Part shown: one piece after another, positions 1 through 25,618 of the stretch | Layout of the letters: the number at the start of each line of letters is the position of its first letter | Position numbering within the stretch: the stretch's first letter is position 1 | Assembly (NCBI GenBank): GCA_977020255.1 | Contig: CDROCS010002866.1 | Location: 1 to 64,000, forward strand | Length of the DNA stretch: 64,000 nt | Source: Obrimoposthia wandeli | Taxonomy: Eukaryota | Reading direction: 5' to 3' | Translations under genes and position numbers: made by a program | The notes under the pieces: model-generated | The model's input: the letters and a program-made list of their open reading frames with translations, nothing else | Told to the model about the DNA's origin: nothing | Database searches by the model: none

Positions 1-294
1 TTCATTACGCGGCGTTTCGACAATAGTAACCTTCATATTAAGTGCTTTTTCGTAGATCATATCAACATCGTTAACGACAAAAGTTACATACATACCCGTT
101 GGTATATTTTGATACTCCTTAGGGACTAAATCGTGATTTCGCTGAATAATTCCGTACTCAATTTCTGAATTACTTGGCGAACAAAGCTGAATATACCAGT
201 CACTATCATATTTAACTTTAAAATCGAGAAGCTCTACATAGAAGTCTTTGCTTTTTTGGAGGTCATTCGAGCATATATTTGTAAGTATTCTCAT
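1..294 (-). CDS. VOC/glyoxalase family protein (runs off left edge; not in ORF track)
   Basis: Manual translation MRILTNICSNDLQKSKDFYVELLDFKVKYDSDWYIQL...TFVVNDVDMIYEKA; GAGG RBS upstream. Confidence 0.75.
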   Translation of the reverse strand, partial: MRILTNICSNDLQKSKDFYVELLDFKVKYDSDWYIQLCSPSNSEIEYGIIQRNHDLVPKEYQNIPTGMYVTFVVNDVDMIYEKALNMKVTIVETPRNE

Positions 295-310
295 TGCTTC
301 CTCTTTATTT

Positions 311-410
311 CAGTAACGTTGGCGACAACTGCAGGCATGTAGCACAGGTTTTACGATTTTTTTCAAAAGCCGCGACGTAGGATTGTCAGTTTGATTGTTT
401 TTGCTAGTTC
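311..410 (-). repeat. attC-like site (degenerate)
   Basis: Core GTTACTG on minus strand directly before RBS/ATG of VOC gene; imperfect palindrome. Confidence 0.5.
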
Positions 411-755
411 GGTGACACATGATCTTCATAAAATAAAGTAACGCACAACGGTTAATTTGAGCGTCCGCTAAGGGATTGAACTAGCAGACGCCATGATATC
501 TATTGGGCATGCCTTAAAAAATTAGCAGGGCTTGCCGAGGGTTGCATAACTTATCAACAGGAATGGGAACGGAGCAACTAAATATATGTCAATGCTGATG
601 TCTTTTAGATCAAATTCAAACAAAAATTAACTGCTTTTAAGAAATTTCATTAGCAATACTGCTTTCGCAGCATCAAGAAAGACTATTACATGACAGTAAA
701 AGAGCGCACATATACATCCTTTAAATACTAGGAGCAAAGCTAACTGTTACTGTTC

Positions 756-1373
756 CTACTTGTGCGGCTTATCGGCTGGAAGTACACTTAATTCCATTGT
801 AGTAGAGCCGCCAAAGCCAAGTAACCATTTTAAATATGGATAGCTTTCCGTTTTTACTGATTTAAATCCCATTCGTTCATATAGAACCTTAGCCTTGGTA
901 TTAATATCAATAACATCTAAACGTACGTTATTAAATTTATGATCTTTAGCATATTTTGCCACCTCTGTTAAAAGATGACTCCCCACACCTTTCCCTCTTG
1001 CATCAGAGTGAACAGCTATGCCATCCATAATTAACTCGTTAAAAGTAGCCTTTCGCGCATAAAGGTCAAAAATAACAGCAGCCCAACTCCCCTGGATAAC
1101 TCCTAATTGAGAAACTAACTCACTATACGTTATCCCGCCTGTCAATGAACCTTCTGGAGTTTGGAATCCGGCGATCCCAATTAATTCATCTTGATAAACA
1201 GCACCAATTACATAATCAAGAATGAAGCATTTATTTAAAAAAAGAATTCTCTTTTCTTTAGAAGGTATTACAACTGCAAACTTTTGTCCAAAAGCTTCAT
1301 CGTATAAATCAACAGCACAGTCTCTATATTTTTCAGGCAAGCCAACGTGATAATTAATATCCTCAGTGTTCAT
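756..1373 (-). CDS. GNAT family acetyltransferase
   Basis: Motif A DGIAVHSDARGKGVGSHLL and LYERMGF; start set at ATG 1373 after GGGAG. Confidence 0.88.
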   Translation of the reverse strand: MNTEDINYHVGLPEKYRDCAVDLYDEAFGQKFAVVIPSKEKRILFLNKCFILDYVIGAVYQDELIGIAGFQTPEGSLTGGITYSELVSQLGVIQGSWAAVIFDLYARKATFNELIMDGIAVHSDARGKGVGSHLLTEVAKYAKDHKFNNVRLDVIDINTKAKVLYERMGFKSVKTESYPYLKWLLGFGGSTTMELSVLPADKPHK

Positions 1374-1389
1374 CCGAACTCCCATTGAA

Positions 1390-1421
1390 GCCAACGCCTC
1401 GCCCAGAGGAGGGCGTTAGGT
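1390..1421 (-). repeat. Very short (32 bp) attC-like site
   Basis: Minus strand ACCTAAC-gccctcctctgggcgaggc-GTTGGC between two cassette ORFs. Confidence 0.5.
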
Positions 1422-1433
1422 GGCTAGTGAAAC

Positions 1434-1682
1434 TTATAAACTCATAATTTTTAAAGCAATATAGGGTGCCACTATAAAAACTAACGTGGCTATTTTATAG
1501 TTACTCAAAAAATCATAATACTTTGAGCCAAGATCCTTTTCATCCACTGTGAACATCTTGCTATGAATGGAAGATATTGCTCCTCTGGCGAATGTAATAA
1601 CTATTGTTGCCAAGAGAAGATAGCTAATATTGATTATCGCAACCCAGCCTAAAAGTTCTGTTAATTGTGTAAGTGTAATCAT
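1434..1682 (-). CDS. Small two-TM membrane protein (DUF6868-like)
   Basis: 82 aa with two hydrophobic segments, cassette context. Confidence 0.6.
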   Translation of the reverse strand: MITLTQLTELLGWVAIINISYLLLATIVITFARGAISSIHSKMFTVDEKDLGSKYYDFLSNYKIATLVFIVAPYIALKIMSL

Positions 1683-1857
1683 AGCTTACGCCTTGTGATC
1701 AGGTAATTTCTGATATGTATTTAGACATAATAACTTCCTCTAAATGTTAGTTCACAAATGCGTGAATCAGACTGAACATAGCCATAATAGAACTTAGGAT
1801 ATATCAAGTGGAAGGAAGTGATCGTGTAAGACAATAACATAATCATTGAACAGCTTG

Positions 1858-2429
1858 TTATAAGTAACTTACACCATACTTAACTTGAATGAAGTCATTA
1901 GGAAATGCAACAGCCTTTGAATTTACCAGCTTAATACTATTATTTATCCTACCAAAAAGAGGGATGCCCTCCCCCAAAATAACAGGAGCTTTAGTTATTA
2001 TCATTGCATTGATAAGTTGCAGATTAATAAAAGACGTAATAGTTGCACCTCCATCAATATAGGCGTGTTTAAAACCGTTATTTTCAAGTTGATTTATTAG
2101 CTTTGTAATGTCGCCAGAATACATCTCAACTTTGTCACATAAATTTTGAGGCGGCTCTTTCATTGAATTACTTAAAACATAGATTTTAATAGTGCCGTAA
2201 GGCCATTGCTCAGGCGTTAAATTAAATTTGGAAATTACTTCCATACATTTTCGCCCCATAACCATGCAATCGACTGAAGCCATGAAGCCATGAAGCTATT
2301 GAAGCCCATATCAAGATTTTTGCTCATATCAGCATCGGTGTTACCTGCTGCATATATCCAGTCAACACCACCTTCGAGTGTTGCTATATAACCATCGGCA
2401 CTTGTTGCTATATATACTGAACACTTCAT
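1858..2429 (-). pseudogene. Dihydrofolate reductase/RibD C-terminal family protein, frameshifted
   Basis: YIATSADGYIA (2235-2429) and VMGRK...YIDGGATITSF...PVILGEGIPLF (1858-2283) are in different frames, joined at an 8-bp duplication at 2275-2290. Confidence 0.88.
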
Positions 2430-2457
2430 AGTTGATCATTACTCTATACTTAAGGTT

Positions 2458-2553
2458 ACTTATAAAGCCGCGTTAGCCGTTGTTTATAATTGGCTAAATA
2501 GTGAGGAACGACAGCAGCCAACTGTTTAACGCCCGCTTGAGTCGCTTATTAGG
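2458..2553 (-). repeat. attC site, ~100-bp host-type
   Basis: Shares GGCTAAAT...GAACGA...AGCCAACTGTTT core with other spacers. Confidence 0.75.
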
Positions 2554-2565
2554 TGATCTTATAGA

Positions 2566-3500
2566 TTAGTTAAGTATAAACTCACTAATGGCTTTAACTA
2601 ACTCAGGCTTTATAGGTAATTCAGGTTGATTGTATGTTTGAAAGTTAGCTTGCCTATCAAGAGTAGCCTCTTTAAAAATGTGATTCATTTTTTGTATGAC
2701 AACTTTATCTGCCTTTTTATTTGCTGCTGAAAGCCTATCAGCATCCATTAAACTAACTTGAATATCGGTAGATCCTTGAACAATTAACACAGGCTTATTA
2801 AGTTTAGAAATTTCTTTTTGTGGATCGTATTTAAACCAAGAAATCATATAAGGTTGTATACTTGGTCGAAATAATGAGTTTAAAAATGCAGGAACATTTT
2901 CAACTATTTCACCACCCATCAGTTTATCTAAGATAGGTGTTGATTGCGCTATGACGAAAGTCGGTTGAGATTTTAACTGCTCCCGTATTGTTTGATCTAT
3001 TGGTTGTCCTGCACCTGCAATAGATATAAATCTATCTACTTTTTTTTGCTGTGAGGCAACCATACCAATTAATGAACCCTCACTATGTCCAATAATAACT
3101 ATTTTATTAAAGCTGTTTAAATTATAGAGGTATTCAATCCAACTACTTGCGTCATTAATATAGTTTTCAAAACGCAGATCAACTTCCTTTAATCCTGAGC
3201 TTTTACTTTTACCAACACCTCTTTTGTCATATCGTAACGATGAAACTCCTACTTTTACAAGCTCATGAGCCAGCATTTTTAAAGATTTGTTTATCATTGT
3301 TCGGTTATTACCATTTCTATTGGCTGCTCCTGAGCCCGCGATAATCAATGCCACTGTTTTAGAATTTTTTAAATCGTCAATCTGTAGAGTTCCCTCTAAC
3401 CTTCCTGTGCCTGTTTCAATACTCACAATTTTTCTATTGAAGCTACGAATGTATTGAAAGTAGTAGACAACCAAAGTGATACGATAAAAAATAATTTCAT
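2566..3500 (-). pseudogene. Alpha/beta hydrolase; signal peptide separated by a frameshift
   Basis: GHSEG nucleophile, D and H in STDIQV/MNHIF; ATG 3500 encodes MKLFFIVSLWLS..., out of frame at an A5 run (3429-3433). Confidence 0.75.
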
Positions 3501-3741
3501 AATGTTCCTTAATTTATTAAATCCATCGTTTTAGTGATAATCAAAGCTGTTGAATGCACTAAGGAAGCAGTGAACAAATCCCAGACGCCCCTGGCGAACA
3601 GGATTGTTTGTGATTAGGTAATGGTTACAGGCGGGCGGGAATTATTAACAAAGAGCACAAATGATTCTGTATTCCCCGTAGGGGATCAGTCGCTTCTGCC
3701 CTAAACACCTAAACATAATAATGCCCTCTTGCGTAACTTTG

Positions 3742-4227
3742 TTAGGCACCTCTACGTTCAGGTTCTTTTTCATGTATATAGATTCCATATCCATCGACAG
3801 GATGTGGCACCGAAGCGAGATCTAGTGCATGAGCAATATTACCCCTGTGGTACGATCCGTGATTTACTACGTGAAACAGAATTTCCTCTACAGACAACAT
3901 ACCAAGCTTGCCATCAGCAAAAGTGAATGAAACTTGTTTCTCCTCGTTCTCAAGTTCACAAAGATAATTAGCATACCACTTATTAGAAACCATCAGCATT
4001 CGGCTTAGTTCATCAAAGTTAGGAATTACTTCTGTGTTAGTATTTCTATGTGGAGTGGGGCTTACTATTAGTCGGCTTTTGAACAACTCTTCTACAATGA
4101 TCATGTGATTGAGCTGTTGAAGTACGAATGCATAAGAATCCGGAAACGAGATTCGATTAATATCTTCGATGGCTCGCAAAGTGCGCTCGTCAGCCCATCT
4201 CTTATAATTGAATGCTTGAATGTACAC
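3742..4227 (-). CDS. DinB family protein
   Basis: LNHM...ILFHVVNHGSYHRGNI DinB metal-binding His motif. Confidence 0.85.
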   Translation of the reverse strand: MYIQAFNYKRWADERTLRAIEDINRISFPDSYAFVLQQLNHMIIVEELFKSRLIVSPTPHRNTNTEVIPNFDELSRMLMVSNKWYANYLCELENEEKQVSFTFADGKLGMLSVEEILFHVVNHGSYHRGNIAHALDLASVPHPVDGYGIYIHEKEPERRGA

Positions 4228-4242
4228 GCGATCTCCCTGGAA

Positions 4243-4343
4243 ACCTAACGCTCGCTTAAGCGGGCAAAAATTATTGGTTATAATGTGGAGCGAAACGAAA
4301 CCTAACCAGCTGTTTTTTATTTCGTTTAAAGCGCTTGTTATAA
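4243..4343 (-). repeat. attC site, ~100-bp host-type
   Basis: ACCTAAC...GCTTAAG...GCGAAACGAA...CTTGTTATAA; both cores intact. Confidence 0.9.
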
Positions 4344-4973
4344 GCCGATATACGCAAAAGCTTCGTTTTTATTTTTAAAGTTTTTAATTGATTGATGATG
4401 TTCGAGTTTATCTCCGACTAAAACAAAGTTAACACCTAACTCTTTGCAAGCCTTTAAATCCCAACTTCCATCGCCAAAATATGTAAATGATAACCGGACT
4501 TTTTTAATTGCCCTTTTCTCTGCAATTTTCATAATCTCGATTCTTGAATAATGATCATTAGAGGACGCTATTGCAATGCCTGAAATATCGAAGCCTGCGG
4601 ACTTCAATTTTAAAACTGCACTCTCATACCAACCACCCGTTGCTAATGAAATTACGACATCATCTAGTGCTTTTAAGTTGTCTATAAATGCTGAAGCCCC
4701 AGAAATCTCACTAATTGATTTTTCATCAATTCGAGTTTTAATTTTGGCTAAAAATACACTTTTAATGTTTTCTGTAACTACATTAGTATTTTTAATGCCC
4801 TTTTGATTAAAAAATTCATTAAGGATTCCAGTATCTGTTACATGCTTATAACGCGCCCAGTCTGTATTAATATCAAATCCAGTTACTTCTTCTACAGCCT
4901 GTTTAAAGCACTCAGTGTCGAAATCATATGATTCAATAAGTGTTCCATCAATATCAAACATTACATGGTGCAT
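4338..4973 (-). CDS. HAD family hydrolase
   Basis: FDIDGTL motif I, LATG motif II, FGDGSWD motif IV. Confidence 0.88.
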   Translation of the reverse strand: MHHVMFDIDGTLIESYDFDTECFKQAVEEVTGFDINTDWARYKHVTDTGILNEFFNQKGIKNTNVVTENIKSVFLAKIKTRIDEKSISEISGASAFIDNLKALDDVVISLATGGWYESAVLKLKSAGFDISGIAIASSNDHYSRIEIMKIAEKRAIKKVRLSFTYFGDGSWDLKACKELGVNFVLVGDKLEHHQSIKNFKNKNEAFAYIGL

Positions 4974-4991
4974 AGTGCAAATCCCTTTGAC

Positions 4992-5063
4992 TTATAACGC
5001 CGCGTTCTGCTGAAATTTGGGAGCGCCAGCGAGTAAGTTTTACGTAGTAGCCGCTTGTTATAT
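4992..5063 (-). repeat. attC site, short (72 bp) type
   Basis: TTATAAC-GCC...GCCGCTT-GTTATAT. Confidence 0.85.
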
Positions 5064-5087
5064 TTTATCCCAGTAATATTTTATAAT

Positions 5088-5957
5088 TCAAAGAATCCAC
5101 TCATGCGAAAAGGCCTTTGTTAAATACTGCATCACCAATTTTATTCTTTCTACATTACGTAAGTCTGGGTGTGTTAACAACCACAAGTTGCTGGGTTTAC
5201 TCTCTTGAACACCAAATAGCCTTACTAGTTCAGGCCTAGATTGATCGTCAGGCAAGAAAGCTAGCCCTTGGCCATACTCGGCAAAGTAAGACATTGCGGT
5301 CAAATCATCACAGCGGGTTATAACTTGATCTGCAAAGTGTTTGTCTAACCATTTGAATGCCGGTAGGCGATTCATGCCACCTGTAGCCCCGATTAAAGAA
5401 TGATTTACCAAATCATCCATATCACTTGGCAAACCAAACTTATCTTCATAAGCTTTACTTGCAAACACGCTCCAATTCAGTGTACAAACTTGCCTTCCAA
5501 CCAAATGCTCTGCTGGTGAGGATGTTGATCGTACCGCTATATCTGCTTGGCGATTCGACATATTGAATTCTTGATTACTGACCAATAACTCAACTTGTAT
5601 TTCAGGATATTGAATATTGAAATCGGTGATATAGCGCGGTAAATAGCGATAAGCGATATTGTTGGGAGCGGTGATCTTCACTATACCTTTAGGTTGAACA
5701 TCTTTACCCACGAGATGGCGATTTATGCCATCAAAAGAGTTTTCAATATTTTGAGCAAACTCGAGCAGCTCATGGCCCAGTGTTGTTAATTCATAGCGAT
5801 TATTTTTGCGTTCGAATAGCTGCCCACCTATGTCTTCCTCAAATGAAATCAAGCGCCTAAAAATAGTTGAATGATTAACGCCAAGATCTGTTGCCGCACC
5901 AGACAAGGATCCACGACGAACAATCGCCAGAAATACCTTTAATGCATTCCAATCCAT
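5088..5957 (-). CDS. LysR family transcriptional regulator
   Basis: MDWNALKVFLAIVRRGSLSGAA...LFER HTH plus substrate-binding domain. Confidence 0.92.
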   Translation of the reverse strand: MDWNALKVFLAIVRRGSLSGAATDLGVNHSTIFRRLISFEEDIGGQLFERKNNRYELTTLGHELLEFAQNIENSFDGINRHLVGKDVQPKGIVKITAPNNIAYRYLPRYITDFNIQYPEIQVELLVSNQEFNMSNRQADIAVRSTSSPAEHLVGRQVCTLNWSVFASKAYEDKFGLPSDMDDLVNHSLIGATGGMNRLPAFKWLDKHFADQVITRCDDLTAMSYFAEYGQGLAFLPDDQSRPELVRLFGVQESKPSNLWLLTHPDLRNVERIKLVMQYLTKAFSHEWIL

Positions 5958-6072
5958 ATTACTCCTCAAGATATTGCAATTATGCAATATTAGTTTGCAT
6001 ATTATGCTAATTACTATGCCTTTAAGCAATATGTATTATATTCGGACACTTACTTAAACGGAGATAATCATA

Positions 6073-6492
6073 ATGAAACACCTACTTAATACAGACACAG
6101 GCGCACTTATTTTACGAGTTACGCTTGGCAGCGTACTCATAGCACATAGCCTCTACTTGAAAATGATGGTATTTACTTTAGCTGGCACCGCACAGTTTTT
6201 TAGTTCAATCGGCTTACCTGAAGTACTAGCCTATATTGTTTTCTTTGTAGAGGTTGTCTCTGGGGCCTCACTTCTTCTGGGATTCAGTACTCGGTTCTTT
6301 TCTGCACTCGTTATACCCGTCTTACTTGGAGCTACTTGGGTTCACTCTGCAAATGGATGGCTATTCACTAACTCAGGTGGTGGATGGGAGTACCCATTAT
6401 TTCTTACTTTAATGGCAGTTGCACAGCTTAGCCTAGGAGATGGGAAATACTCCATCACTACTTATTTTCGCTCAAAGCAACTTCAAATTTGA
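6073..6492 (+). CDS. DoxX family membrane protein
   Basis: LRVTLG...HS...GGWEYPL DoxX pattern, divergent from LysR. Confidence 0.85.
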   Translation: MKHLLNTDTGALILRVTLGSVLIAHSLYLKMMVFTLAGTAQFFSSIGLPEVLAYIVFFVEVVSGASLLLGFSTRFFSALVIPVLLGATWVHSANGWLFTNSGGGWEYPLFLTLMAVAQLSLGDGKYSITTYFRSKQLQI

Positions 6493-6510
6493 ACCTCGGA
6501 GTAGAACCTC

Positions 6511-18588: not shown

Positions 18589-18598
18589 TAACTTAGCA

Positions 18599-18700: not shown

Positions 18701-19069
18701 TACGATACTTGCGTGCCCAGCTAAAACTTGCCATTTACTATCAAGCTTTTCCCACACCCTAGTGAAACGAAAATTGCCACTTGTAGCCTCTCCTTTGTAG
18801 CTACCAACAATTTGTGCATGTGCAGATACAATTACGACATCACCTGACGATTTAATTATTTGTTCGCTTAAAGATAAGGTACTAATTTTAAAGTCGCCTT
18901 TTTTGTGAGCCTTTAAATCATCATTTTTTGAAAGGATCTGGCCCATGTGATTAGTAAATATCAACTCATCTGAAAGGAGCTGGTTAAGAGCATCAACATC
19001 AGATGAGATCATTGCTAATTTCAAGTTTTCCTCGGCGTCCGTTATTTCCTTTTTTAATACACAATCCAC
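18695..19069 (-). CDS. NTF2-like/DUF4440 protein
   Basis: SDVDALNQLLSDEL...FRFTRVW. Confidence 0.85.
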   Translation of the reverse strand: MDCVLKKEITDAEENLKLAMISSDVDALNQLLSDELIFTNHMGQILSKNDDLKAHKKGDFKISTLSLSEQIIKSSGDVVIVSAHAQIVGSYKGEATSGNFRFTRVWEKLDSKWQVLAGHASIVA

Positions 19070-19085
19070 AGTTATCTCCCTAATA

Positions 19086-19187
19086 GCCTAACGCCGTTTT
19101 AATCGGCGAGAAACAGTTTGCTGGACGGTAAAACAAAGTAGAACCGAGCAAACTGTTGCGATTCCGACTTTAAAATCCTTATTATGT
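19086..19187 (-). repeat. attC site, ~100-bp host-type
   Basis: GCCTAAC-GCC...AGCAAACTGTT...TCC...TTAAAATCCTTATTATGT. Confidence 0.75.
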
Positions 19188-19192
19188 TTTTA

Positions 19193-19551
19193 CTACTTAC
19201 CCATAAAGAAATCTAATATTGAAATAAATAAGACAGGAATTAAACCTGCTATACATGAATTTTAAAAGATTTTTATATTTATGCTTATACAGTAGCAAAG
19301 TTTTCACCTGCTAAATGACCTGCAAGTACACCTAATAATGAAAAAAGTATAAACCCATCGAAAGCACCGTAAACCAGCCAAGCTGTAAATACCATTTTGG
19401 GTACTTCGAGAAAATGACGCTATGAGCTATATTCTCCAAATGGTCCAATAATTCCTCCCATAGGGATAGGAAAGCGAAAAATAAACGCAAACGTCAATGC
19501 AATGGCTAAACTAGAAAATAAAGTAAGAATAATTCCTTTTAATATATTCAT
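19193..19551 (-). pseudogene. Membrane protein gene broken by frameshifts
   Basis: MNILKGIIL...PFGEYSS* continues in another frame as hydrophobic MVFTAWLVYGAFDGFILFSLLG and AGLIPVLFISILDFFMGK*. Confidence 0.6.
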
Positions 19552-19569
19552 ACTCTGTCCTTGAGAAAA

Positions 19570-19667
19570 ACATAACGCCTCATTATGAAGAAAATAATGG
19601 CTGGCTAAAATAGGCGGCGAAGGAGTAAATAGCCAACTGCTATTTATCATTTTAAATAACTTATAGC
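19570..19667 (-). repeat. attC site, ~100-bp host-type
   Basis: ACATAAC-GCC...GGCTAAAAT...GCGAAGGAG...AGCCAACTG. Confidence 0.8.
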
Positions 19668-19683
19668 GTTCATGTTAATTAAC

Positions 19684-20217
19684 TTAAAACTTTTTTGTAT
19701 GTGCGCGTAATTTCTTACTAGCCCAATCGTAATGGCTCGGCATAGCTGATACGCAATAACTACCCAGCGAGGTAGTCCCTGTCCAATCGAAAAATTGTTT
19801 GGTAAAAAGCTGCTCGTTAGAGAAGGTCTCCACTAATTCCAATACTGCTTCGTGGCTAGCTTTAAGCATTTCCATTGCATCTTCAAGTTGTGTGTTTTGG
19901 TGTTTTTTCCAAAACACTATGTTCATTTCACCGTATGTTTTAAAGCTATATGGCTTAGGAATAAACGGCGATTTATTTCCCGCTACGTTAGCATCAACCC
20001 AGCTTAAAAGTAATTGATGCCACTCGTAAAGGTGAGTCAATACATCTCTAAGGTTCTTATCTCGGCTCCAATGCGCTTCCTTTTTTTTAAAGTCACTTGA
20101 AAAGTCGAATTCCGTGTTTAAAGAATCCTCTGGCATTGAGTGAATTATTTGCCATAATTTTTCAAAATTATTATTCGCCGCTGCGAATAATTCGTCTTTT
20201 GTTGTAGCTCTTGTCAT
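19684..20217 (-). CDS. ClbS/DfsB family (DUF1706) four-helix bundle protein
   Basis: RDKNLRDVLTHLYEWH...PSHYDWA. Confidence 0.8.
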   Translation of the reverse strand: MTRATTKDELFAAANNNFEKLWQIIHSMPEDSLNTEFDFSSDFKKKEAHWSRDKNLRDVLTHLYEWHQLLLSWVDANVAGNKSPFIPKPYSFKTYGEMNIVFWKKHQNTQLEDAMEMLKASHEAVLELVETFSNEQLFTKQFFDWTGTTSLGSYCVSAMPSHYDWASKKLRAHTKKF

Positions 20218-20230
20218 TTATATACTCCCC

Positions 20231-20313
20231 ATTAAACGCAACTCTCGTAATGCGCGCCAACTGCGAAATGCCTTCGAGCATCTTTGGTGCTGAAGTGATA
20301 CTACTTGTTAGCT
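20231..20313 (-). repeat. attC-like site, heterologous type
   Basis: TAAAC-GC...ACTACTT-GTTAGCT. Confidence 0.6.
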
Positions 20314-20365
20314 GCAATATCTTCAAACCGACCTAAACGTTTTTTAATATTCAATAACCCTTGGC

Positions 20366-20680
20366 TTATTTTTTCTTGAATTCATCCACTTGCTGTACCC
20401 TAATAATTTTCAACTCGTTGTCTTTTCTAAATTTAACGATAATTAAAAGTAAATTCAAAAGAAAATATGCACTTGTTATCATTACTGCGTTATAGCCTGG
20501 GGAAGCAATCCAAGTAATTAAAACTATAAAGATGGCTAAACCGTGAAAACAGCCATAAATCCTTGATCTTATCTCGCTGCTTACCCATCGTTGTAAACCT
20601 TTATCAGACTTCCCTTTTAGCATCTCAGCTTGGAGTTTAAAGACCTCTAAATCACCATGTTCATTGGATGCTCCTGACAT
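20366..20680 (-). CDS. Hypothetical two-TM protein
   Basis: ORF with GGAGG RBS directly after an attC core. Confidence 0.55.
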   Translation of the reverse strand: MSGASNEHGDLEVFKLQAEMLKGKSDKGLQRWVSSEIRSRIYGCFHGLAIFIVLITWIASPGYNAVMITSAYFLLNLLLIIVKFRKDNELKIIRVQQVDEFKKK

Positions 20681-20694
20681 AAATAATAACCTCC

Positions 20695-20794
20695 AGTTAA
20701 CCCTCCACTAAGAAGCTTTTAATTGTTGTTTAAAATGTAAAGTGAAGCGGAAGCTAGCCTACTGCTAATAACCCTGATCAATGGCTTGTTATAC
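20695..20794 (-). repeat. attC site, ~100-bp host-type
   Basis: AGTTAAC...CTAAGAAG...TAAAATG...GCGGAAG...GGCTT-GTTATAC. Confidence 0.8.
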
Positions 20795-21655
20795 GGAGAT
20801 TACCACCGTACCAACGATGCTTGCAAAACCACCTACTTTTACATTGATTACAGTAGCGTTATCACATTTAACGGAAGCTGTAATTATAGAAGTACAATCC
20901 ATCGCTCTACCTTGTTCAAAAACATAGTTACTTCCCAAAGTTAAATGCTCTGTAAGATAACATGCTAAAGCACCACTAGAGCTGCCCGTAGCTGATTCTT
21001 CTGAGATACCAAACAATGGAGCAAAGTTACGGCAGCTTGCTGTAAATTTACTTTCAGAATCACAAAGCTCAAAAACATGAAAACCAACAACCTTATGCTT
21101 CTCGCAAAAGTTAGCGATAAGTTCATCATTTGGTTCTATCAAATCTAAATATCCGTTAGGAACAGGAATAATCACATCAGGTAGCCCTGTTGAAATAACT
21201 TCAATAGGTAACTTCGTGCTTTCTAATATGCTGCTTTCAATGCCAATAACATCTGAAATTTCTTGATATGAAAAGCAATCTAATTTTTGAGGTAATTGCT
21301 GCTCCATTACTACCTTACCATTTGGTTCAATGGTCACTGGTATTATTCCAACTTTCGTACGTTGAACATAAGAGCCTGCTGTAAGAATACCTTTTTGGTG
21401 CATAATAGAAAAAGTTGCTAACGTAGCGTGGCCGCAAAAGTCAACTTCGCCTGTTGTAGTAAAGAACGAGACCTCATAATCAGCTTCGTCATCACTAGAA
21501 ACAAAAGCCGTTTCTGAATACCCTACAGCTTGTGCAACTTTCAGTTTTTGAGCATCCGACAGTTGGTCGCTATTCAAGACAACACCTGCTGGGTTCCCGC
21601 CTTTTCCATTTACAGTAAATGAGTTTACCAAAGCAACTTCGATATTCACCAACAC
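20789..21655 (-). CDS. PhzF family phenazine biosynthesis-like epimerase
   Basis: GGNPAGVV, YSETAFV, EVDFCGHAT, EESATGS. Confidence 0.92.
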   Translation of the reverse strand: MLVNIEVALVNSFTVNGKGGNPAGVVLNSDQLSDAQKLKVAQAVGYSETAFVSSDDEADYEVSFFTTTGEVDFCGHATLATFSIMHQKGILTAGSYVQRTKVGIIPVTIEPNGKVVMEQQLPQKLDCFSYQEISDVIGIESSILESTKLPIEVISTGLPDVIIPVPNGYLDLIEPNDELIANFCEKHKVVGFHVFELCDSESKFTASCRNFAPLFGISEESATGSSSGALACYLTEHLTLGSNYVFEQGRAMDCTSIITASVKCDNATVINVKVGGFASIVGTVVISV

Positions 21656-21666
21656 CCTCTTCCTCG

Positions 21667-21766
21667 TATAAACGCCTCATTTAGAGGCAAAAAATTAGTT
21701 AGTTAAAATAAGCGACGTAGGAGCAAAAACTAGCTGTTATTTATTCTTTTCAATGACTTGTATGGC
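21667..21766 (-). repeat. attC site, ~100-bp host-type
   Basis: TAAAC-GCC...TAGAGGC...GCGACGTAGGAGCAAAAACTAGCTGTT...CTTGTATGGC. Confidence 0.8.
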
Positions 21767-21770
21767 GCTG

Positions 21771-22019
21771 TTAGTCGCAACCACCACTATCTGAACCTCC
21801 ACCGTCATGACCACCTGAGTATCCGCCACTACCTGAACCGGAACTTGAATTTCCATCGCTAAGTAAACCGAATCTATGTAATATTTTTATAGCGGTAATT
21901 AAGGCACAAAAACCAAAGATGAGCGGTGCAAAAACACTTTCAAATACACTATCTGATACAAGTTCAATAGATGTCCATGTGAAGTACATGATAACAAGCA
22001 CGATTAACCAAAATTTCAT
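21771..22019 (-). CDS. Hypothetical two-TM protein with Gly/Ser-rich C-terminus
   Basis: GGAGG RBS; SGSGSGGYSGGHDGGGSDSGGCD tail. Confidence 0.65.
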   Translation of the reverse strand: MKFWLIVLVIMYFTWTSIELVSDSVFESVFAPLIFGFCALITAIKILHRFGLLSDGNSSSGSGSGGYSGGHDGGGSDSGGCD

Positions 22020-22237
22020 TTAAGCCTCCATTTTACATTTAATGTTTAGTACCTAGCCATAATGACTTCACCCTAGGCTAAGCTCTTTATCTTGGGTAAT
22101 AATCCGAATCCATGAAGGAAAAGAATGTTTAAATTATAAGCAGGAACAAGTGAGCGTTACTTGACGTGGTGAGTCATACCAACGCTTAAAGAACCAGCTG
22201 CTGTTTCATTTCTATCCGCGCTACTTGAATTGCTAGC

Positions 22238-22606
22238 TTATATTTCCGATATCAAAGTTTCGAATAATTCTTCAATCTTCTTTAGGACTGGATGATTTTC
22301 AACTTGATAATTCCTGCAATAATCTTCTGTTGTCTGGTGAACTATCAGTGTTTCCCCATCAACATCTACGATAGCTAAACGTAAAGGTAGATCCAGGCTC
22401 ATTGCTATGTCCGTTTGCATCAGTTTGGTTCCGGCTACAGGGTTCCCAAAAATCAGTACTCGCGATGCTGCCATTTCTAAGTCTACGCTTTTAGCGTTCG
22501 CTTGATGGTCTATATCAACAAAAATTTTAAAGCCTTTTTCTTGTAATGATTTAGTCAGGTATTCCGCTGAATCTTTTACTGATAAGTTTACTTTTATTCT
22601 TTTCAT
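22238..22606 (-). CDS. DUF302 domain protein
   Basis: IDHQANA...LIFGNPVAGT.LMQ...LDLPLR. Confidence 0.85.
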   Translation of the reverse strand: MKRIKVNLSVKDSAEYLTKSLQEKGFKIFVDIDHQANAKSVDLEMAASRVLIFGNPVAGTKLMQTDIAMSLDLPLRLAIVDVDGETLIVHQTTEDYCRNYQVENHPVLKKIEELFETLISEI

Positions 22607-22652
22607 TTTGAGTTATTTCTCCGAAATTGAATATCTGCTATTCGCTTATAAA

Positions 22653-22753
22653 AGCTAACGCCTGTTTAAGGGGCTTAAAATAGCTTGCTAAAATGTGTAG
22701 CGAAGCGAAACCAAGCAAACTGTTAACAGTCCCGCTTTAAATTCTTGCATGTG
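22653..22753 (-). repeat. attC site, ~100-bp host-type
   Basis: AGCTAAC-GCC...TTAAGGGG...GCTAAAATG...GCGAAGCGAA...AACTGTT...GTCCC. Confidence 0.85.
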
Positions 22754-23121
22754 TTTTTAAACAAAGACTGTTCGTTCTCTAATTCAATCTTCTGTTTTAC
22801 TTTAATATCTTTCCAGCTTTCACCGTTTTCGACACCAGAAATACGCTCTTCATATTTAATACATGTACGTTTTAAAACAGAGCTTACATTAATTCCTGAT
22901 TCTTTCTCCAAGTTGATGAGGACATTTAGATAATCCCATAAAACATCGCCAAGCTCTTCCTCTAGATAGCAAGATCGGTTTTTAGGTATTTCCTCAATTA
23001 CTTCATCAATTTCACCTTTAATTTCTGTCAAATATGTATTAGCGCCATTTGACCAATCACTTTCTTGATCTATTTGCTTCTTTCTTCTGGCAATGGCCAA
23101 TAAAATATCGAACTCTTTCAT
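22723..23121 (-). CDS. MazG-like nucleotide pyrophosphohydrolase
   Basis: EIKGEIDEV...LEEELGDVLW dimeric NTP-PPase motif. Confidence 0.8.
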   Translation of the reverse strand: MKEFDILLAIARRKKQIDQESDWSNGANTYLTEIKGEIDEVIEEIPKNRSCYLEEELGDVLWDYLNVLINLEKESGINVSSVLKRTCIKYEERISGVENGESWKDIKVKQKIELENEQSLFKNTCKNLKRDC

Positions 23122-23137
23122 CAAAACCTCTCTAAAC

Positions 23138-23241
23138 ACATAGCGCCCGTCTCACCGAGCAAATATTTGACGACGGCTTTTGTGCGTTATTTTTACAAAA
23201 GGCGACAGTGGATATTTGTCCGGTGAAGCCGCTTGTTCAAC
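23138..23241 (-). repeat. attC site (~104 bp)
   Basis: CATAGC-GCC...CACCG...ATATTTG...GTCCGGTGAAGCCGCTT-GTTCAAC. Confidence 0.75.
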
Positions 23242-23268
23242 AGGCATTAGCACGACAAAACGCTTGAG

Positions 23269-23751
23269 TCAGATCTCATTCGACACCACCAATTTCTTAG
23301 TCATGCTGTACAGTATAACGTCCTTATATTTCTCTGGATGAAGGGTGTTCGTTCGTCGCCAACCTAGGTGTTCATAGATCATCTGATTTTCCAATGCTAG
23401 ACCGCCTACAATCAATTGAAGCGACCGATGTCCTGCGTCAATAGCAGCACGTTCGACTACCTCAAGTAATTTGGAGCTAATCCCTTTACCACGGCGATCC
23501 GGTGCTACCATCAGACGCTCAATGTTCGGAATGCCCCTGTATATGCGTAGACTAACCGCTCCAACAATTCGGTATTTTTCAATAGCAACCCAAGATTTGG
23601 ACTCGGCGAGCCGTGCTACGAATTCGACAAGAGCCTCGTTCAGAGAGGGAATATCCGGGGTCTCGTACAATCGCCCTTCGTCTACAAACGCTGCACGTTG
23701 AAGCGTAAACATTTCGCCGTGATCTGCAGCCACTTCCGATCGAATTTTCAT
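23269..23751 (-). CDS. GNAT family acetyltransferase
   Basis: IERLMVAPDRRGKGISSKLL; more GC-rich than its neighbours. Confidence 0.85.
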   Translation of the reverse strand: MKIRSEVAADHGEMFTLQRAAFVDEGRLYETPDIPSLNEALVEFVARLAESKSWVAIEKYRIVGAVSLRIYRGIPNIERLMVAPDRRGKGISSKLLEVVERAAIDAGHRSLQLIVGGLALENQMIYEHLGWRRTNTLHPEKYKDVILYSMTKKLVVSNEI

Positions 23752-23851
23752 ACTGCGTCGCCTTTTTACTGATTTCTTTCAAATAATCCTGTTTGTGGAG
23801 CAGTTGTCCCACGTATAAAAACTGAGAAATTCCAGCAATTGGCTTATTAAC

Positions 23852-23952: not shown

Positions 23953-24405
23953 TGACGTTATACTTAAAAAGTAATTATAAACCCCACTGCTTTTTTCATA
24001 GCCCAATGATTCGTATAATGCTTGGGCATTATGATTATCTTCTGATGTTTCAAGAGCAATACCATTAGCATTAGTTTCTGCTGCTAATGTATTAGCAGCA
24101 CTCATCAACTGTTTTGCAACCCCAAGGCCTCTTGCACGTTCGGCCACAAACAGATCATTTAACACCCAACTTCTTTTAGCTGAAACAGAAGAAAATGTTG
24201 GATAAAGTTGAGTAAAACCTAAATAGTCTCCATCCTGGTTTTGAGCGAAAAATATAACCGATTCACTATTGCGAATACGTTCAGAAATAAAATTAGCAGC
24301 TAAATCTATATCCGTCTCTTGTTTATAAAACATGCGGTATGAATTAAATAACTCTGACACACCCTTAATATTTTCTAATGTTGCCTGCTTAACACTTATG
24401 TTCAA
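23947..24405 (-). CDS. GNAT family acetyltransferase
   Basis: GFTQLYPTFSSV...LNDLFV...RGLGVA...AQALYESLGY; TTG start chosen downstream of the attC core. Confidence 0.88.
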   Translation of the reverse strand: MNISVKQATLENIKGVSELFNSYRMFYKQETDIDLAANFISERIRNSESVIFFAQNQDGDYLGFTQLYPTFSSVSAKRSWVLNDLFVAERARGLGVAKQLMSAANTLAAETNANGIALETSEDNHNAQALYESLGYEKSSGVYNYFLSITSG

Positions 24406-24420
24406 TTGATACCCCTTGAA

Positions 24421-24523
24421 GCCTAACGCCTCACTAAGATGCAAATAATTGTTGGCTAATAAAATAGGTGACGAAGGAGCAAATAGCCAACTGTTACTTG
24501 TCCTGTTGAGTGGCTTGTATGTG
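24421..24523 (-). repeat. attC site, ~100-bp host-type (first cassette)
   Basis: GCCTAAC-GCCTCACTAAG...TTGGCTAA...AGCCAACTGTT...GTCCTGTTGAGTGGCTTGTATGTG. Confidence 0.9.
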
Positions 24524-24531
24524 AAATGCGA

Positions 24532-24798
24532 CTACCTAAGCTGACTATCTTTACTGCCACGACGATTAATACCCCCTGTACTAGCAATTTTTGCTTCAAC
24601 ATTGGATTGGCATGATATACAAAGCTGAACTCCAGGGATCGCTGAACGCCTAGCCTCTGGAATAGTAGATTCACATTCTTCACAGACCTTAGCACTTTTA
24701 CCTGACTTAATATTGCTTCGTGCTAACTCAACGGCATCTTTCACACTTGCATCAATTTGATCTTGTACTGCTCCATCACGAACCCAGCCACCTGCCAT
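24532..24798 (-). CDS. DksA/TraR family C4 zinc-finger protein (YbiI-like)
   Basis: MAGGWVRDGAVQDQID, CEEC...IPEARR...C..CQ. Confidence 0.9.
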   Translation of the reverse strand: MAGGWVRDGAVQDQIDASVKDAVELARSNIKSGKSAKVCEECESTIPEARRSAIPGVQLCISCQSNVEAKIASTGGINRRGSKDSQLR

Positions 24799-24839
24799 CT
24801 AAATGCCCCTTTATGAAATGATTTACTATAAGACTTTAC

Positions 24840-24890
24840 ACATAACTGTTTAATACTGCGCATGCGCATTTAAACGGAGAAGTAAATTCT
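24840..24890 (-). other. attI recombination site
   Basis: Minus strand ...TTTAAATGCGCATGCGCAGTATTAAACA-GTTATGT; no attC-style palindrome; lies between the first cassette and intI. Confidence 0.75.
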
Positions 24891-25093
24891 ACAAAAAAAT
24901 ATAACTATTTTATTTACCAATAAAAATATCTATTTTATAAAAGCCTTCCTGGGAAAAATAGCATGCGCGTTTGTAAAAAGAACGAGTTTCTCATTATGTG
25001 TTTTTTTACTTATCTATATCACTGATATTGCATCAGTTTCCATTTTATTACCAGCGTAAACGAGCACGACCTCAAGTTAACATTGAAATAATA

Positions 25094-25109
25094 CTGGTTA
25101 CATATACAA
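25094..25109 (+). promoter_or_regulatory. Degenerate LexA (SOS) box upstream of intI
   Basis: CTGG-TTACATAT-ACAA versus CTGT-N8-ACAG; position typical of intI promoters. Confidence 0.45.
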
Positions 25110-25130
25110 CCATCAAACATGGTAATTCTT

Positions 25131-25618
25131 ATGTAGAAATGCCAATTTACCGATCAAGTTAGACAATCTATCAGGCTGCGTGGTTACAGTATACGTACCG
25201 AAAAAATTTATGCTTTTTGGATGGCTGATTTAATCCGCTTTCATAATTTCACACATCCAACTAAACTGGGTGCTAAAGAGGTTGGGCAATTTTTATCGTA
25301 TCTAGCCAATAGCAGGCATGTGGCGATTAACACGCAAAAAACAGCGCTAAACTCCTTAGCTTTTTTGTACCATCAATGGGTGATCTTGGATTCAAATATG
25401 CAACCAAACAAAGGAGCATACCTATTGTATTAATCACTGAAGAGGTAAAACAAATCCTGCTTCAATTAAGCGGGCGTAATCATCTGATTATTTCATTGCT
25501 ATACGGTTCTGGTTTACGCAAATCCCAATGCATGAGATTACGAGTTCAAAATGTGAATCTGCAAAAATTATCTTTAACAGGACATGATGGTTGGATTAAG
25601 CTTCACTATTCTCAGTGA
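25131..25618 (+). pseudogene. intI: Integron integrase pseudogene
   Basis: ATG-TAG then QVRQSIRLRGYSIRTEK...FH...HP...EVGQFLSYLA...TQKTALNSLAFLY; frameshift ~25375; LLYGSGLR...RLRV; homology ends after GHDG at ~25593. Confidence 0.93.

What the first reader, a model, noticed from the sequence alone, without database searches (positions are those of the whole stretch)
1..25618. Frozen, eroding chromosomal super-integron of at least ~30 cassettes
Almost every intergenic spacer in 1-24.8 kb is an attC-like palindrome, and the ORFs are co-oriented away from attI/intI. The integrase is dead, and at least five cassettes carry frameshifts or nonsense codons. This is a snapshot of an array decaying into a CALIN-like state while intI is still recognisable, and it continues past the left edge.
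Basis: partly seen in the sequence, partly recalled or inferred. Interest (0 to 1): 0.75.

Follow-up and report, generated by a model that had tools for sequence, protein, structure and literature searches.

The report
Decaying chromosomal integron, two dead integrases
This is a long gene-cassette array (an integron) in a marine bacterium whose capture enzyme gene is reduced to a broken front half and whose recombination sites and some cargo genes are decaying, a known kind of element caught partway through its loss.

Summary
Window 1-24.85 kb is the integrase-proximal part of a chromosomal integron, and it runs to base 1 of its 548.6-kb contig. The contig comes from an Oceanospirillaceae-like marine bacterium inside a 1.35-Gb mixed assembly.

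- **attC sites:** Sixteen attC sites of one ~115-nt family lie on the minus strand at 2.4-24.5 kb. A covariance model built only from attCs on other contigs recovers all 16 and nothing else in the window at E < 0.3.
- **Other junctions:** About five more junctions have fair support. About ten are motif-level only, so "~30 cassettes" is an upper reading.
- **intI (25137-25591):** It keeps profile positions 2-154 of 315, with a frameshifting internal deletion. The catalytic half is gone.
- **Second relic (new here):** 25592-26362 holds a second, more eroded platform: one cassette, an attI of another type, and ~36 degenerate integrase codons abutting yeiP.
- **Second integron:** A second integron 72 kb away on the contig has a stop codon just before its catalytic tyrosine.
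- **Erosion:** Only 3 of 16 attCs keep both AAC and GTT core triplets, against 40 of 56 in sister arrays (p = 3e-4). Two attCs are truncated. Three cassette genes are firmly broken and one probably is, not the five claimed.

"Frozen" holds in cis only. This is a new member of a known kind, comparable to Xanthomonas integrons and to the proposed origin of CALINs. Other notes of this scan concern attC-related elements elsewhere in this assembly, not this locus.

The parts
25137..25591 (+). intI-A remnant. Codons for TIGR02249 positions 2-81 lie at 25137-25385 and positions 89-154 at 25391-25591, in another frame after a short internal deletion. Positions 155-315 (IntI-specific insert, catalytic His/Arg/Tyr) are absent.
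   Evidence: It is 72% aa identical to the intact IntI of G002. The junction at 25585-25592 shows GATGGT microhomology with both parents. A Logan unitig of run X4 spans 25491-25940.
24846..25136 (.). attI-A and promoter region. The likely crossover GTTATG (minus strand) is at 24841-24846. Two GCATGCGC(R)TTT direct repeats are present.
   Evidence: Read from the sequence. Homology to the attI region of the intact G002 integron (L099 416-642) and of C2735/C1089 starts at 24834-24842, where the cassettes begin to differ.
25592..25759 (-). Conserved element 3' of the 85-aa ORF. It may be an attC of another class; status not established.
   Evidence: 91-93% and 78-81% identical blocks sit just 3' of cassette ORFs in the C2735 and C1089 arrays. 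No significant end-to-end fold.
25760..26021 (-). Single cassette of relic platform B: an 85-aa membrane-like ORF (25760-26017) with no Pfam family. Its ATG directly follows the attI-B crossover.
   Evidence: The 5' end resembles that of the YkuD cassette (repeat family D16).
26022..26255 (.). attI-B relic, with an inverted repeat TAGGCGGAA...GCGCCTA.
   Evidence: 72% identical over 351 aligned columns (E 6e-43) to the region directly upstream of the intact intI of C5466. Also 74% identical to C2866:96692-96807, upstream of the intI of integron 2.
26256..26362 (+). intI-B remnant: about 36 degenerate codons with the start codon lost, indels and a TAG. It is cut off 11 nt from the stop of yeiP.
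   Evidence: Alignment to the C5466 intI start. An ice-metagenome relative keeps the same junction (X1 record 8, 26262-27000).
26374..26949 (-). yeiP (EF-P-like). First core gene, used as the anchor for synteny.
   Evidence: 100% (best aligned segment) and 94% aa identity to Oceanospirillaceae MAGs. In G001 an intI-A pseudogene sits next to it.
24417..24845 (-). Cassette 1: DksA/TraR-type zinc-finger ORF 24532-24798. attC 24417-24534 with R'' CATAC and R' GTTAGG.
   Evidence: 98.4 bits; 85.8 bits
23848..24416 (-). Cassette 2: GNAT acetyltransferase ORF 23947-24444. attC 23848-23963, one of three with both AAC and GTT.
23136..23847 (-). Cassette 3: GNAT ORF 23269-23751. Non-family ~115-nt attC 23136-23250 with R' mutated to GCT.
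   Evidence: Fold z = -2.8 with end-to-end pairing. 74.5% identical to the first attC beside the intact intI of C5466. Pfam.
22649..23135 (-). Cassette 4: MazG ORF 22723-23139. attC 22649-22763.
21663..22648 (-). Cassettes 5-6: DUF302 ORF 22238-22606 and an 82-aa ORF 21771-22019. Only a degenerate attC-like remnant lies between them (22150-22236, no fold support). attC 21663-21777.
20691..21662 (-). Cassette 7: PhzF-family ORF 20789-21655. attC 20691-20805 with AAC and GTT kept.
19566..20690 (-). Cassettes 8-9: a 104-aa ORF 20366-20680 with a motif-level attC candidate at 20224-20313, then DUF1706 ORF 19684-20217. attC 19566-19680.
19082..19565 (-). Cassette 10: small membrane ORF interrupted by an in-frame TAG at 19420-19422 (probable pseudogene). 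attC 19082-19198.
   Evidence: No Pfam family.
17926..19081 (-). Cassettes 11-12: DUF4440 ORF 18695-19069 with attC 18595-18711, then NTP_transf_6 ORF 18023-18559 with attC 17926-18040.
16975..17925 (-). Cassette 13: beta-lactamase-fold gene in two frames (17363-17887 = profile 46-194; 17037-17414 = profile 208-313). The shift is at the C8 run 17394-17401. A short attC candidate lies at 16975-17052 (z = -1.9; R' reads TTT).
15688..16974 (-). Cassettes 14-15: a 149-aa ORF 16512-16961 with a short hairpin attC 16482-16558 (R' GTTAGGC), then GST ORF 15800-16459. It is followed by a truncated family attC (5' half only) at 15688-15816.
   Evidence: z = -4.6; 18.9 bits
14264..15687 (-). Cassette 16, now fused to cassette 15: agmatine-deiminase-like ORF 14574-15692, an 8-nt tandem repeat at 14413-14484, and attC 14264-14378 with R' mutated to GCT.
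12184..14263 (-). Cassettes 17-19: SRPBCC ORF 13802-14239 with attC 13714-13826 (R' GTA). GST ORF 13057-13695 with attC 12948-13062 (R' GCT). MOSC ORF 12281-12943 with attC 12184-12294.
9458..12183 (.). Four-gene block without internal attC: cNMP-binding regulator (+, 11535-12050), SDR (10726-11457), DUF2141 (10275-10724) and DedA/VTT (9598-10263). A motif-level attC candidate lies at 9458-9541.
   Evidence: R1/R2 give 12-14.5 bits.
7180..9457 (-). Cassettes 21-24.
- 126-aa ORF 9095-9475 with attC 8991-9103.
- Methyltransferase ORF 8419-8979 with candidate 8345-8420.
- GrpB broken by an in-frame TAA at 8081-8083 (pieces match profile 2-72 and 79-125) with candidate 7757-7856.
- YkuD ORF 7277-7819 with candidate 7180-7275.
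4239..7179 (.). Three-gene block: GST (+, 6511-7176), DoxX (+, 6073-6492) and LysR (-, 5088-6029), with attC candidate 4992-5064 whose 7-bp R boxes pair. Then HAD ORF 4338-4973 with attC 4239-4354 (AAC and GTT kept).
   Evidence: (17.5 and 89 bits)
2456..4238 (-). DinB ORF 3742-4227 with candidate attC 3645-3748, plus a 170-nt non-coding stretch holding a dispersed repeat (3560-3683). Then alpha/beta-hydrolase ORF 2566-3474 with attC 2456-2565 (R' TTT).
1..2455 (-). Distal cassettes.
- RibD_C gene frameshifted at the 8-nt tandem repeat 2275-2296 (pieces 2238-2435 and 1861-2295).
- DUF6868 ORF 1434-1682 with mini palindrome 1390-1430.
- GNAT ORF 756-1394 with a partial attC at 731-770.
- An ORF-less stretch at 310-730.
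- A glyoxalase-family ORF 1-309 cut by the contig end.

Best explanation
Window 1-24,846 is the integrase-proximal part of a sedentary chromosomal integron of a marine or sea-ice Oceanospirillaceae-like gammaproteobacterium.

**Layout.** The cassettes are on the minus strand. Each is a mostly promoter-less ORF followed by an attC, an imperfect palindrome R''-L''-variable stem-L'-R' with extra bases on the '' arm that mark the recombined bottom strand. They were once stacked at attI-A (crossover near 24,846) by IntI-A, whose gene diverges from the array.

**Loss of the integrase.** That gene now keeps only its first ~154 codons, with a frameshifting internal deletion. A deletion ending in a 6-8-nt microhomology removed the catalytic half. 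It joined the stump to the last cassette of a second, different integron platform (attI-B plus ~36 degenerate codons of intI-B) that abuts yeiP.

**Consequence.** With no integrase in cis, and with the contig's other integron integrase stopped just before its catalytic tyrosine, the array is no longer maintained by recombination and is decaying by mutation:
- most attCs have lost the AAC and/or GTT core triplets;
- two attCs are truncated, fusing neighbouring cassettes;
- three to four cassette genes are broken.

**Shown versus inferred.** Shown: the anatomy, the homologies, the attC structure and the relative degeneracy. Inferred: the order of events, the microhomology mechanism, and loss of mobility.
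For: **attC family and structure**
- nhmmer gives 16 significant hits, all on the minus strand, plus partial sites at 15752-15794 and 731-770; it finds none significant outside 1-24.6 kb.
- R1 finds 16 sites.
- R2, built from 55 attCs on other contigs, recovers the same 16 at 28-86 bits. The next best hit in the window is 18.9 bits.
- Pairing is 77.7% against 31-44% slid, with covariation 0.29 against 0.08-0.13. On 72 sites pairing is 83.8%, with 239 double-change cells against 19-74.

**Platform A**
- TIGR02249 matches at positions 2-81 (77.9 bits) and 89-154 (58 bits), far below the 265-bit cut-off, with nothing beyond.
- 72% aa identity to the intact 332-aa IntI of G002, with a collinear attI.
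- G001 has the same gene next to yeiP, truncated at position 242 with a TGA.
- C2735 and C1089 keep attI-A-like DNA plus arrays but no intI.

**Platform B**
-.

**Junctions**
- Junctions are supported by independent unitigs.
- Microhomology at the intI-A junction.

**Integron 2**
- A 15-nt insertion with TAG lies before YTHV.

**Erosion**
- AAC and GTT are both kept in 3 of 16 sites here.
- The same count is 16/17, 4/4, 3/3 and 9/14 beside intact or recently broken intI, and 5/11 and 1/4 in integrase-less clusters. Fisher p = 3e-4.
- Truncated attCs.
- Pseudogenes.

**Cargo**
- Cargo is typical of chromosomal integrons (GNAT, GST, DinB, MazG, DUFs).
- Array GC is 0.378 against 0.429 in the flank.
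Against: - IntegronFinder's generic attC model was not available. My models are family-specific, so about ten junctions rest on motifs only, and several show no better-than-shuffled folding.
- The attC family occurs on many contigs of this mixed assembly, three with intact intI. One of them could belong to the same cell and act in trans.
- Degenerate R'' boxes such as CATAC recur in several sites. They could be an inherited, still usable variant rather than independent decay.
- The comparison of triplets relies on sites found by covariance search, which may miss the most degenerate sites elsewhere.
- The C8 frameshift may be a sequencing error.
- One Logan contig joins attC 21723 to attC 22665, but with only 28 nt on one side. 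This is not usable evidence either way.
Confidence: 0.85

Rival explanations
1. The array is not frozen. An intact integron integrase encoded elsewhere in the same genome still excises and inserts these cassettes in trans, and the degenerate R'' boxes are a tolerated family variant.
For: The same attC family flanks intact intI genes on C253, C666 and C5466. The assembly is unbinned, so one of these could be the same organism. The array shares no cassettes with the syntenic G001 array, so turnover went on after the lineages split. The CATAC-type R'' recurs in several sites.
Against: Both integrase genes on this 548-kb contig are dead. C253 carries its own yeiP at only 71% identity, so it is another organism. 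R-box triplets are significantly more degenerate here than beside intact integrases. Two attCs are half-deleted and cassettes are fused.
Confidence: 0.2
2. The array originally belonged to another platform (type B or integron 2) and was brought next to the intI-A stump by rearrangement. The adjacency of stump and array would then be secondary.
For: Two platform relics lie in tandem. The same attC family serves type-A and type-B platforms. A deletion junction with microhomology shows the locus has been rearranged.
Against: The attI-A region is collinear with the intact G002 integron. Homology stops exactly at the predicted attI crossover, where cassette 1 starts. Orientation and spacing are those of a normal platform.
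Confidence: 0.08
3. The repeats are ordinary intergenic palindromes (REP/BIME- or MITE-like), or the structure is an assembly chimera, and the region is not an integron.
For: The assembly is a large mixture. A naive AAC...GTT hairpin scan is not enriched in the array. Rfam has no match.
Against: The repeats are strand-specific, placed one per gene 3' end, and have R/L box covariation with bulges on one arm. They sit beside integrase and attI homologues, and the same family sits beside intact intI genes elsewhere. Logan unitigs of run X4 match 21156-24990 without differences and bridge the 25591/25592 junction.
Confidence: 0.02

Closest known systems
Sedentary chromosomal integrons of marine gammaproteobacteria (Vibrio cholerae superintegron and kin)
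   Same: Chromosomal location. A long array of co-oriented, mostly promoter-less small cassettes. A homogeneous, long (~115 nt) species-group-specific attC family that starts TAACAAG-like and ends GGCGTTAG-like. Cargo of GNAT, GST, DinB, MazG and unknown genes. intI divergent from the array.
   Different: The integrase is a stump. No toxin-antitoxin cassettes were recognised by Pfam in these 25 kb. Only 16-31 attCs are visible before the contig ends. Two platforms of different integrase types lie in tandem.
Xanthomonas chromosomal integrons with inactivated intI (bioRxiv 10.1101/2025.06.18.660453)
   Same: The ancestral chromosomal platform has intI deleted or truncated in many lineages, leaving stable cassette arrays. 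Related lineages show different lesions.
   Different: Different phylum-level host group and anchor gene (yeiP rather than ilvD). Here decay of the attC core triplets was measured against sister arrays, and a second platform relic is present.
[quoted passage not shown] 2016, PMC4889954)
   Same: By IntegronFinder's operational rules (PF00589 plus the intI_Cterm profile) this array would be called a CALIN. The paper proposes loss of intI as one origin, and found recognisable intI pseudogenes near only 15 of 279 CALINs.
   Different: A recognisable N-terminal intI remnant and the attI are still attached. The paper's pseudogene screen used the C-terminal profile, which is exactly the part missing here, so cases like this would be counted as CALINs without a pseudogene.

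Membership tests
Integron (complete) | Intact intI: a tyrosine recombinase with the IntI-specific additional domain and the catalytic R-H-R-Y residues | tested here: not met
   Only TIGR02249 positions 2-81 and 89-154 are present, at 77.9 and 58 bits against a 265-bit cut-off, in two frames. Nothing matches positions 155-315. The intI-B relic has about 36 degenerate codons.
Integron (complete) | attI site adjacent to intI, at the head of the array | tested here: met
   24846-25136 is collinear with the region upstream of the intact G002 intI. Homology ends at a GTTATG crossover where cassette 1 begins. Recombination activity was not tested.
Integron (complete) | attC sites: R''-L''...L'-R' imperfect palindromes with conserved AAC/GTT and extrahelical bases | tested here: met
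   The structure is supported by covariation on 20 and on 72 sites. All 16 sites are recovered by a model built from other contigs. However, only 3 of 16 keep both AAC and GTT.
Integron (complete) | Detection of the sites by IntegronFinder's generic attC covariance model | not testable with these tools
   The model is not in Rfam (0 hits) and not otherwise available. Family-specific models were used instead.
Integron (complete) | Co-oriented cassettes, one ORF per attC, transcribed away from attI | tested here: met
   35 of 38 ORFs are on the minus strand. Exceptions are two multi-gene blocks with plus-strand genes.
CALIN (operational, IntegronFinder) | Two or more attC sites within 4 kb of each other, and no integrase passing both the PF00589 and intI_Cterm profiles nearby | tested here: met
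   16 attCs spaced at most ~5 kb apart (mostly 0.5-2 kb; one gap, 4354 to 8991, exceeds 4 kb if weak sites are ignored). No C-terminal integrase sequence is present in the window. The definition is taken from PMC4889954.
Sedentary chromosomal integron / 'super-integron' | More than 19 attC sites, or fixed in the species, with homogeneous attCs (criterion of PMC4889954) | tested here: inconclusive
   There are 16 strong and 5 fair sites before the contig end; the array is cut at base 1. The syntenic intI-A next to yeiP in G001 argues for an old chromosomal platform.

The most novel reading that the evidence does not exclude
The locus records the death of two different integron platforms in tandem. 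A type-A integrase was beheaded by a microhomology deletion that fused it to the first cassette of a type-B platform, itself cut down to attI and ~36 codons.

The co-assembled relatives form a graded series: intact, then stop codon, then truncated at position 242, then truncated at 154, then integrase absent with attI kept. Loss of the attC core triplets increases along that series.

If that holds, this group of sea-ice and seawater Oceanospirillaceae would be a natural system to time how CALINs arise from integrons. It would also suggest that many 'CALINs without a pseudogene' are simply arrays whose intI lost its C-terminal half.
Probability: 0.45. Interest if true: 0.55.

Novelty: new member of a known kind. 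Interest (0 to 1): 0.38.

Why it matters
Chromosomal integrons with inactivated integrases are known, for example in Xanthomonas. Loss of intI is one proposed origin of the many integrase-less attC clusters in genomes, but few such clusters have a recognisable pseudogene beside them. This locus is a clear intermediate: attI and the N-terminal half of intI are still attached. It also offers a measurable sign of site decay relative to sister arrays of the same attC family, and a set of relatives at different stages. It shows that screens based on the C-terminal IntI profile miss such remnants. For annotation, it says that the ~30 small genes at the start of this contig are integron cargo of a marine bacterium, several of them already dead.

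Tried and rejected
- **Rfam scan of the window:** no family. attC is not an Rfam family.
- **Naive scan for AAC...GTT-bounded hairpins, ranked by folding energy or outer-stem pairs:** no enrichment in the array. It mostly picked coding sequence and was abandoned as not discriminating for AT-rich attCs.
- **RNAalifold on the MAFFT alignment:** found only the central stem because of bulges. I supplied the R/L structure by hand and tested it with slid controls.
- **Motif counts:** TAACAA[AG] on the minus strand occurs at 0.69/kb in the array against 0.13/kb outside. Looser motifs are not informative.
- **DNA folding of 14 non-family junctions:** only 23136-23250, 16482-16558 and 1390-1430 (and the attI-B palindrome) beat shuffles. 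22150-22236, 8345-8420, 7757-7856, 3645-3748 and 25615-25745 do not.
- **Self-assembly search with the array DNA for shared cassettes:** only gene-level matches at 70-88%. These do not inform on cassette boundaries, and no near-identical duplicate of the array exists.
- **Own-genome search with the 180-nt element 25586-25765:** found only itself.
they look like terminators, not attCs. R1/R2 give only E 0.5-3 there.
- **blastn between the two intI genes of the contig:** no hit. They are different integrase types (33-39% aa identity).

Full report
**Context.**
The window is the first 64 kb of contig C2866 (548,631 bp) of a 1.35-Gb, 6,912-contig assembly. That assembly holds many bacterial genomes: more than 100 tyrosine-recombinase matches, four of them over the integron-integrase cut-off. 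The window's 'left edge' is therefore a contig end.

The YeiP protein next to the locus is 100% (best aligned segment) and 94% identical to those of two Oceanospirillaceae MAGs. Public runs holding related DNA are ice and seawater metagenomes. Array GC is 0.378 against 0.429 for the core genes to its right.

**The repeats.**
Direct-repeat search already shows families of 34-73 nt spaced one gene apart. An HMM from 11 copies finds 16 significant copies, plus partial sites at 15752-15794 and 731-770. All are on the minus strand and all lie in 0.7-24.6 kb; none is significant elsewhere in the window.

Aligned on the minus strand, the copies read as follows:
- an R'' box (consensus TAAC, often forming the ORF's stop codon);
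- a long L'' arm;
- a 7-bp central stem with a variable loop;
- an L' arm;
- an R' box, GGCGTTAG.

The '' arm carries three extra bases (C, C, A on the top strand, hence G, G, T on the bottom strand). This is the asymmetry that marks the recombined strand of attC sites; that reading rests on established knowledge of attC structure.

I wrote the 30-pair structure by hand and tested it.
- 77.7% of cells pair, against 31-44% when partners are slid by 1-3 columns.
- Covariation is 0.29 against 0.08-0.13, and there are 55 double-change cells against 15-33.
- On 72 sites from 15 loci the figures are 83.8% against 35-45%, and 239 against 19-74. That alignment is model-fitted.

**Independent detection.**
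Model R1 was built from 16 window sites and 4 sites from integron 2 (90-96 kb on the same contig). It finds at least 120 members on many other contigs of the assembly. I then built R2 from 55 sites on other contigs only.

R2 recovers exactly the same 16 window sites at 28-86 bits (E 3e-3 to 2e-16), all on the minus strand. The next hit (18.9 bits) is the truncated attC at 15688-15816. Nothing in 25-64 kb reaches E < 0.3. IntegronFinder's generic model could not be run.

**The other junctions.**
Of about 31 ORF-to-ORF junctions on the cassette strand, 16 are strong. Five more have fair support:
- the half-attC at 15688-15816;
- a half-attC at 731-770;
- a 115-nt imperfect palindrome at 23136-23250 (z = -2.8), which is 74.5% identical to the first attC beside the intact intI of contig C5466;
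- a short perfect hairpin ending GTTAGGC at 16482-16558 (z = -4.6);
- a mini palindrome at 1390-1430 (z = -2.3).

About ten junctions have TAACAAG-like and GTTA-like ends in the right places but fold no better than shuffles. They may be other attC classes or decayed sites. Two blocks (9.5-12.2 kb with four genes, and 5.1-7.2 kb with three genes, including the only plus-strand genes) have no internal attC. So 'at least ~30 cassettes' is the generous count, and 21 is the supported one.

**Cargo.**
Pfam gives GNAT acetyltransferases (three), glutathione transferases (four), DinB, DUF1706, MazG, PhzF, MOSC, SRPBCC, HAD, alpha/beta hydrolase, YkuD, a methyltransferase, NTP_transf_6, an agmatine-deiminase-like enzyme, a DksA/TraR zinc finger, and several DUFs and orphans. 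No toxin-antitoxin pair was recognised.

Broken genes:
- RibD_C, whose frame changes at a tandem 8-nt repeat at 2275-2296.
- GrpB, with an in-frame TAA at 8081-8083. Both pieces hit the profile, at positions 2-72 and 79-125.
- A beta-lactamase-fold gene whose two pieces (profile 46-194 and 208-313) overlap at a C8 run at 17394-17401. This one could be a sequencing error.
- Probably a small membrane ORF with TAG at 19420-19422.

These rest. That makes three firm and one probable, not five.

**The integrase.**
25137-25385 matches integron-integrase profile positions 2-81. 25391-25591 matches positions 89-154 in another frame, so about seven profile positions are missing between the two pieces and the reading frame changes. 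Nothing matches positions 155-315, in this window or next to it. The gene has therefore lost its IntI-specific insert and most catalytic residues; this is not a point lesion.

The stump is 72% identical to an intact 332-aa IntI in the related MAG G002. The 230 nt upstream (attI-A) are collinear, and homology stops at 24834-24842, next to a GTTATG at 24841-24846 where cassette 1 begins.

In MAG G001 the same integrase type sits next to yeiP, but ends at profile position 242 and has a TGA. Its array shares no cassette with this one. Two other contigs of the assembly (C2735, C1089) keep attI-A-like DNA (82% and 72%) and attC arrays but have no integrase at all. This gives a graded series of loss.

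Window 26022-26362 is 72% identical (E 6e-43) to the region directly upstream of, and the first ~36 codons of, the intact integrase of contig C5466. It is also 74% identical to the region upstream of the integrase of integron 2 on this contig.

In the window these codons have lost the ATG and carry indels and a stop. They end 11 nt from yeiP. To the left of this attI-B, on the minus strand, lies a single 85-aa ORF (25760-26017) that starts right after a GTTATAAG crossover. Next comes a conserved element (25592-25759) that also follows cassette ORFs in C2735 and C1089. Its attC status is not established.

The stump of intI-A is joined to that element at 25585-25592, where both parental sequences read GATGGT. 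I infer a microhomology-mediated deletion that removed the 3' half of intI-A and whatever lay between the two platforms.

Unitigs of the probable source run match 21156-24990 without differences and bridge 25491-25940. An ice-metagenome relative has the intI-B/yeiP junction. The structure is therefore not an assembly chimera.

**Is it frozen and eroding?**
On this contig the only other integron integrase (96,921-97,898; 428 bits) has a 15-nt insertion with a TAG directly before the YTHV motif that holds the catalytic tyrosine. Both integrases on the contig are therefore dead. The rest of this organism's genome is not identified, so trans-activation cannot be excluded.

For decay, I compared the conserved R-box triplets in sites found by cross-trained models. 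Both AAC and GTT are kept as follows:

| Array | Sites keeping both AAC and GTT |
|---|---|
| This window | 3 of 16 |
| Beside a recently broken intI (C253, 3.0 Mb) | 16 of 17 |
| Integron 2 of this contig | 4 of 4 |
| C666 (intact intI) | 3 of 3 |
| Beside the intact intI of C253 | 9 of 14 |
| Integrase-less cluster, C253 3.65-3.67 Mb | 5 of 11 |
| Integrase-less cluster, C2866 364-370 kb | 1 of 4 |
| All other arrays together | 40 of 56 (Fisher p = 3e-4) |

Four window sites have lost GTT itself (they read GCT, GCT, GTA and TTT). Two attCs are half-deleted, which fuses cassettes.

Caveats: relatedness of sites, possible tolerated variants (CATAC recurs), and detection by covariance score.

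**Comparison with the known.**
This works like, and by anatomy is, a sedentary chromosomal integron. By IntegronFinder's operational rules it would be labelled a CALIN. Cury et al. found recognisable intI pseudogenes near only 15 of 279 CALINs, using the C-terminal profile (PMC4889954). The remnant here lacks exactly that part.

Widespread intI inactivation with stabilised arrays is documented in Xanthomonas (10.1101/2025.06.18.660453). The finding is therefore a new member of a known kind. Its added value is the tandem pair of relic platforms, the deletion junction, and the relative measure of attC decay.

**Earlier notes of this scan.**
Earlier notes concern other places in this assembly.
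- One note describes an IS91-type element that targets attC R'' boxes. A 299-aa tyrosine recombinase plus a 344-aa ORF sit inside integron 2 of this contig and probably correspond to it. No such element is in the window's array.
- Whether such elements contributed to the R'' degeneracy was not tested.

Noticed in passing
G000:C2866:89231-97898 (outside the window; L015, L018, L006): A second integron on the same contig, same orientation and same attC family (4 strong sites). Its full-length type-B intI carries a 15-nt insertion with TAG just before the catalytic-tyrosine motif.
   Followed up: partly
G000:C2866:90612-92532 (L015 6612-8532, + strand): A 299-aa tyrosine recombinase and a 344-aa ORF inserted in the array of integron 2, beside attC 90415-90521. 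An IS91-like ORF also lies in the G001 array (L019 13509-14066).
   Followed up: no
G000:C2866:363830-369651 (L120): A further cluster of 4-5 attCs of the same family on the plus strand, with no integrase match nearby (CALIN-like). Only 1 of 4 sites keeps both core triplets.
   Followed up: partly
window 3560-3683: A ~125-nt non-coding repeat inside the array, 78-80% identical to copies on four other contigs (C2422, C2749, C2027, C4370). Nature unknown.
   Followed up: no
window 14413-14484: About eight tandem copies of an 8-nt unit (TCAAACTG on the plus strand), 3' of the agmatine-deiminase-like ORF and before its attC.
   Followed up: no
window 21601-24600 (attC positions), runs X1 and X2: Logan contigs of an ice metagenome and a seawater metagenome pile up on the attC repeats only, with summed word depth up to ~10^4. 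This attC family appears to be very abundant in those habitats.
   Followed up: no
window 50509-50595, 53945-54054, 55327-55402 (minus strand): Weak, non-significant hits of the attC models (E 0.5-3) in the low-GC accessory region at 50-56 kb. The ~77-nt repeat at 52332-52408 / 53730-53807 looks like a terminator module, not an attC.
   Followed up: partly
G000:C253:2995441-3019194 and 3508441-3528195: A 4.68-Mb contig of a different but related bacterium carries two integrons of the same attC family. One has a broken intI (pieces with stops) and the other an intact one. It also has a third, integrase-less cluster at 3.654-3.674 Mb.
   Followed up: partly
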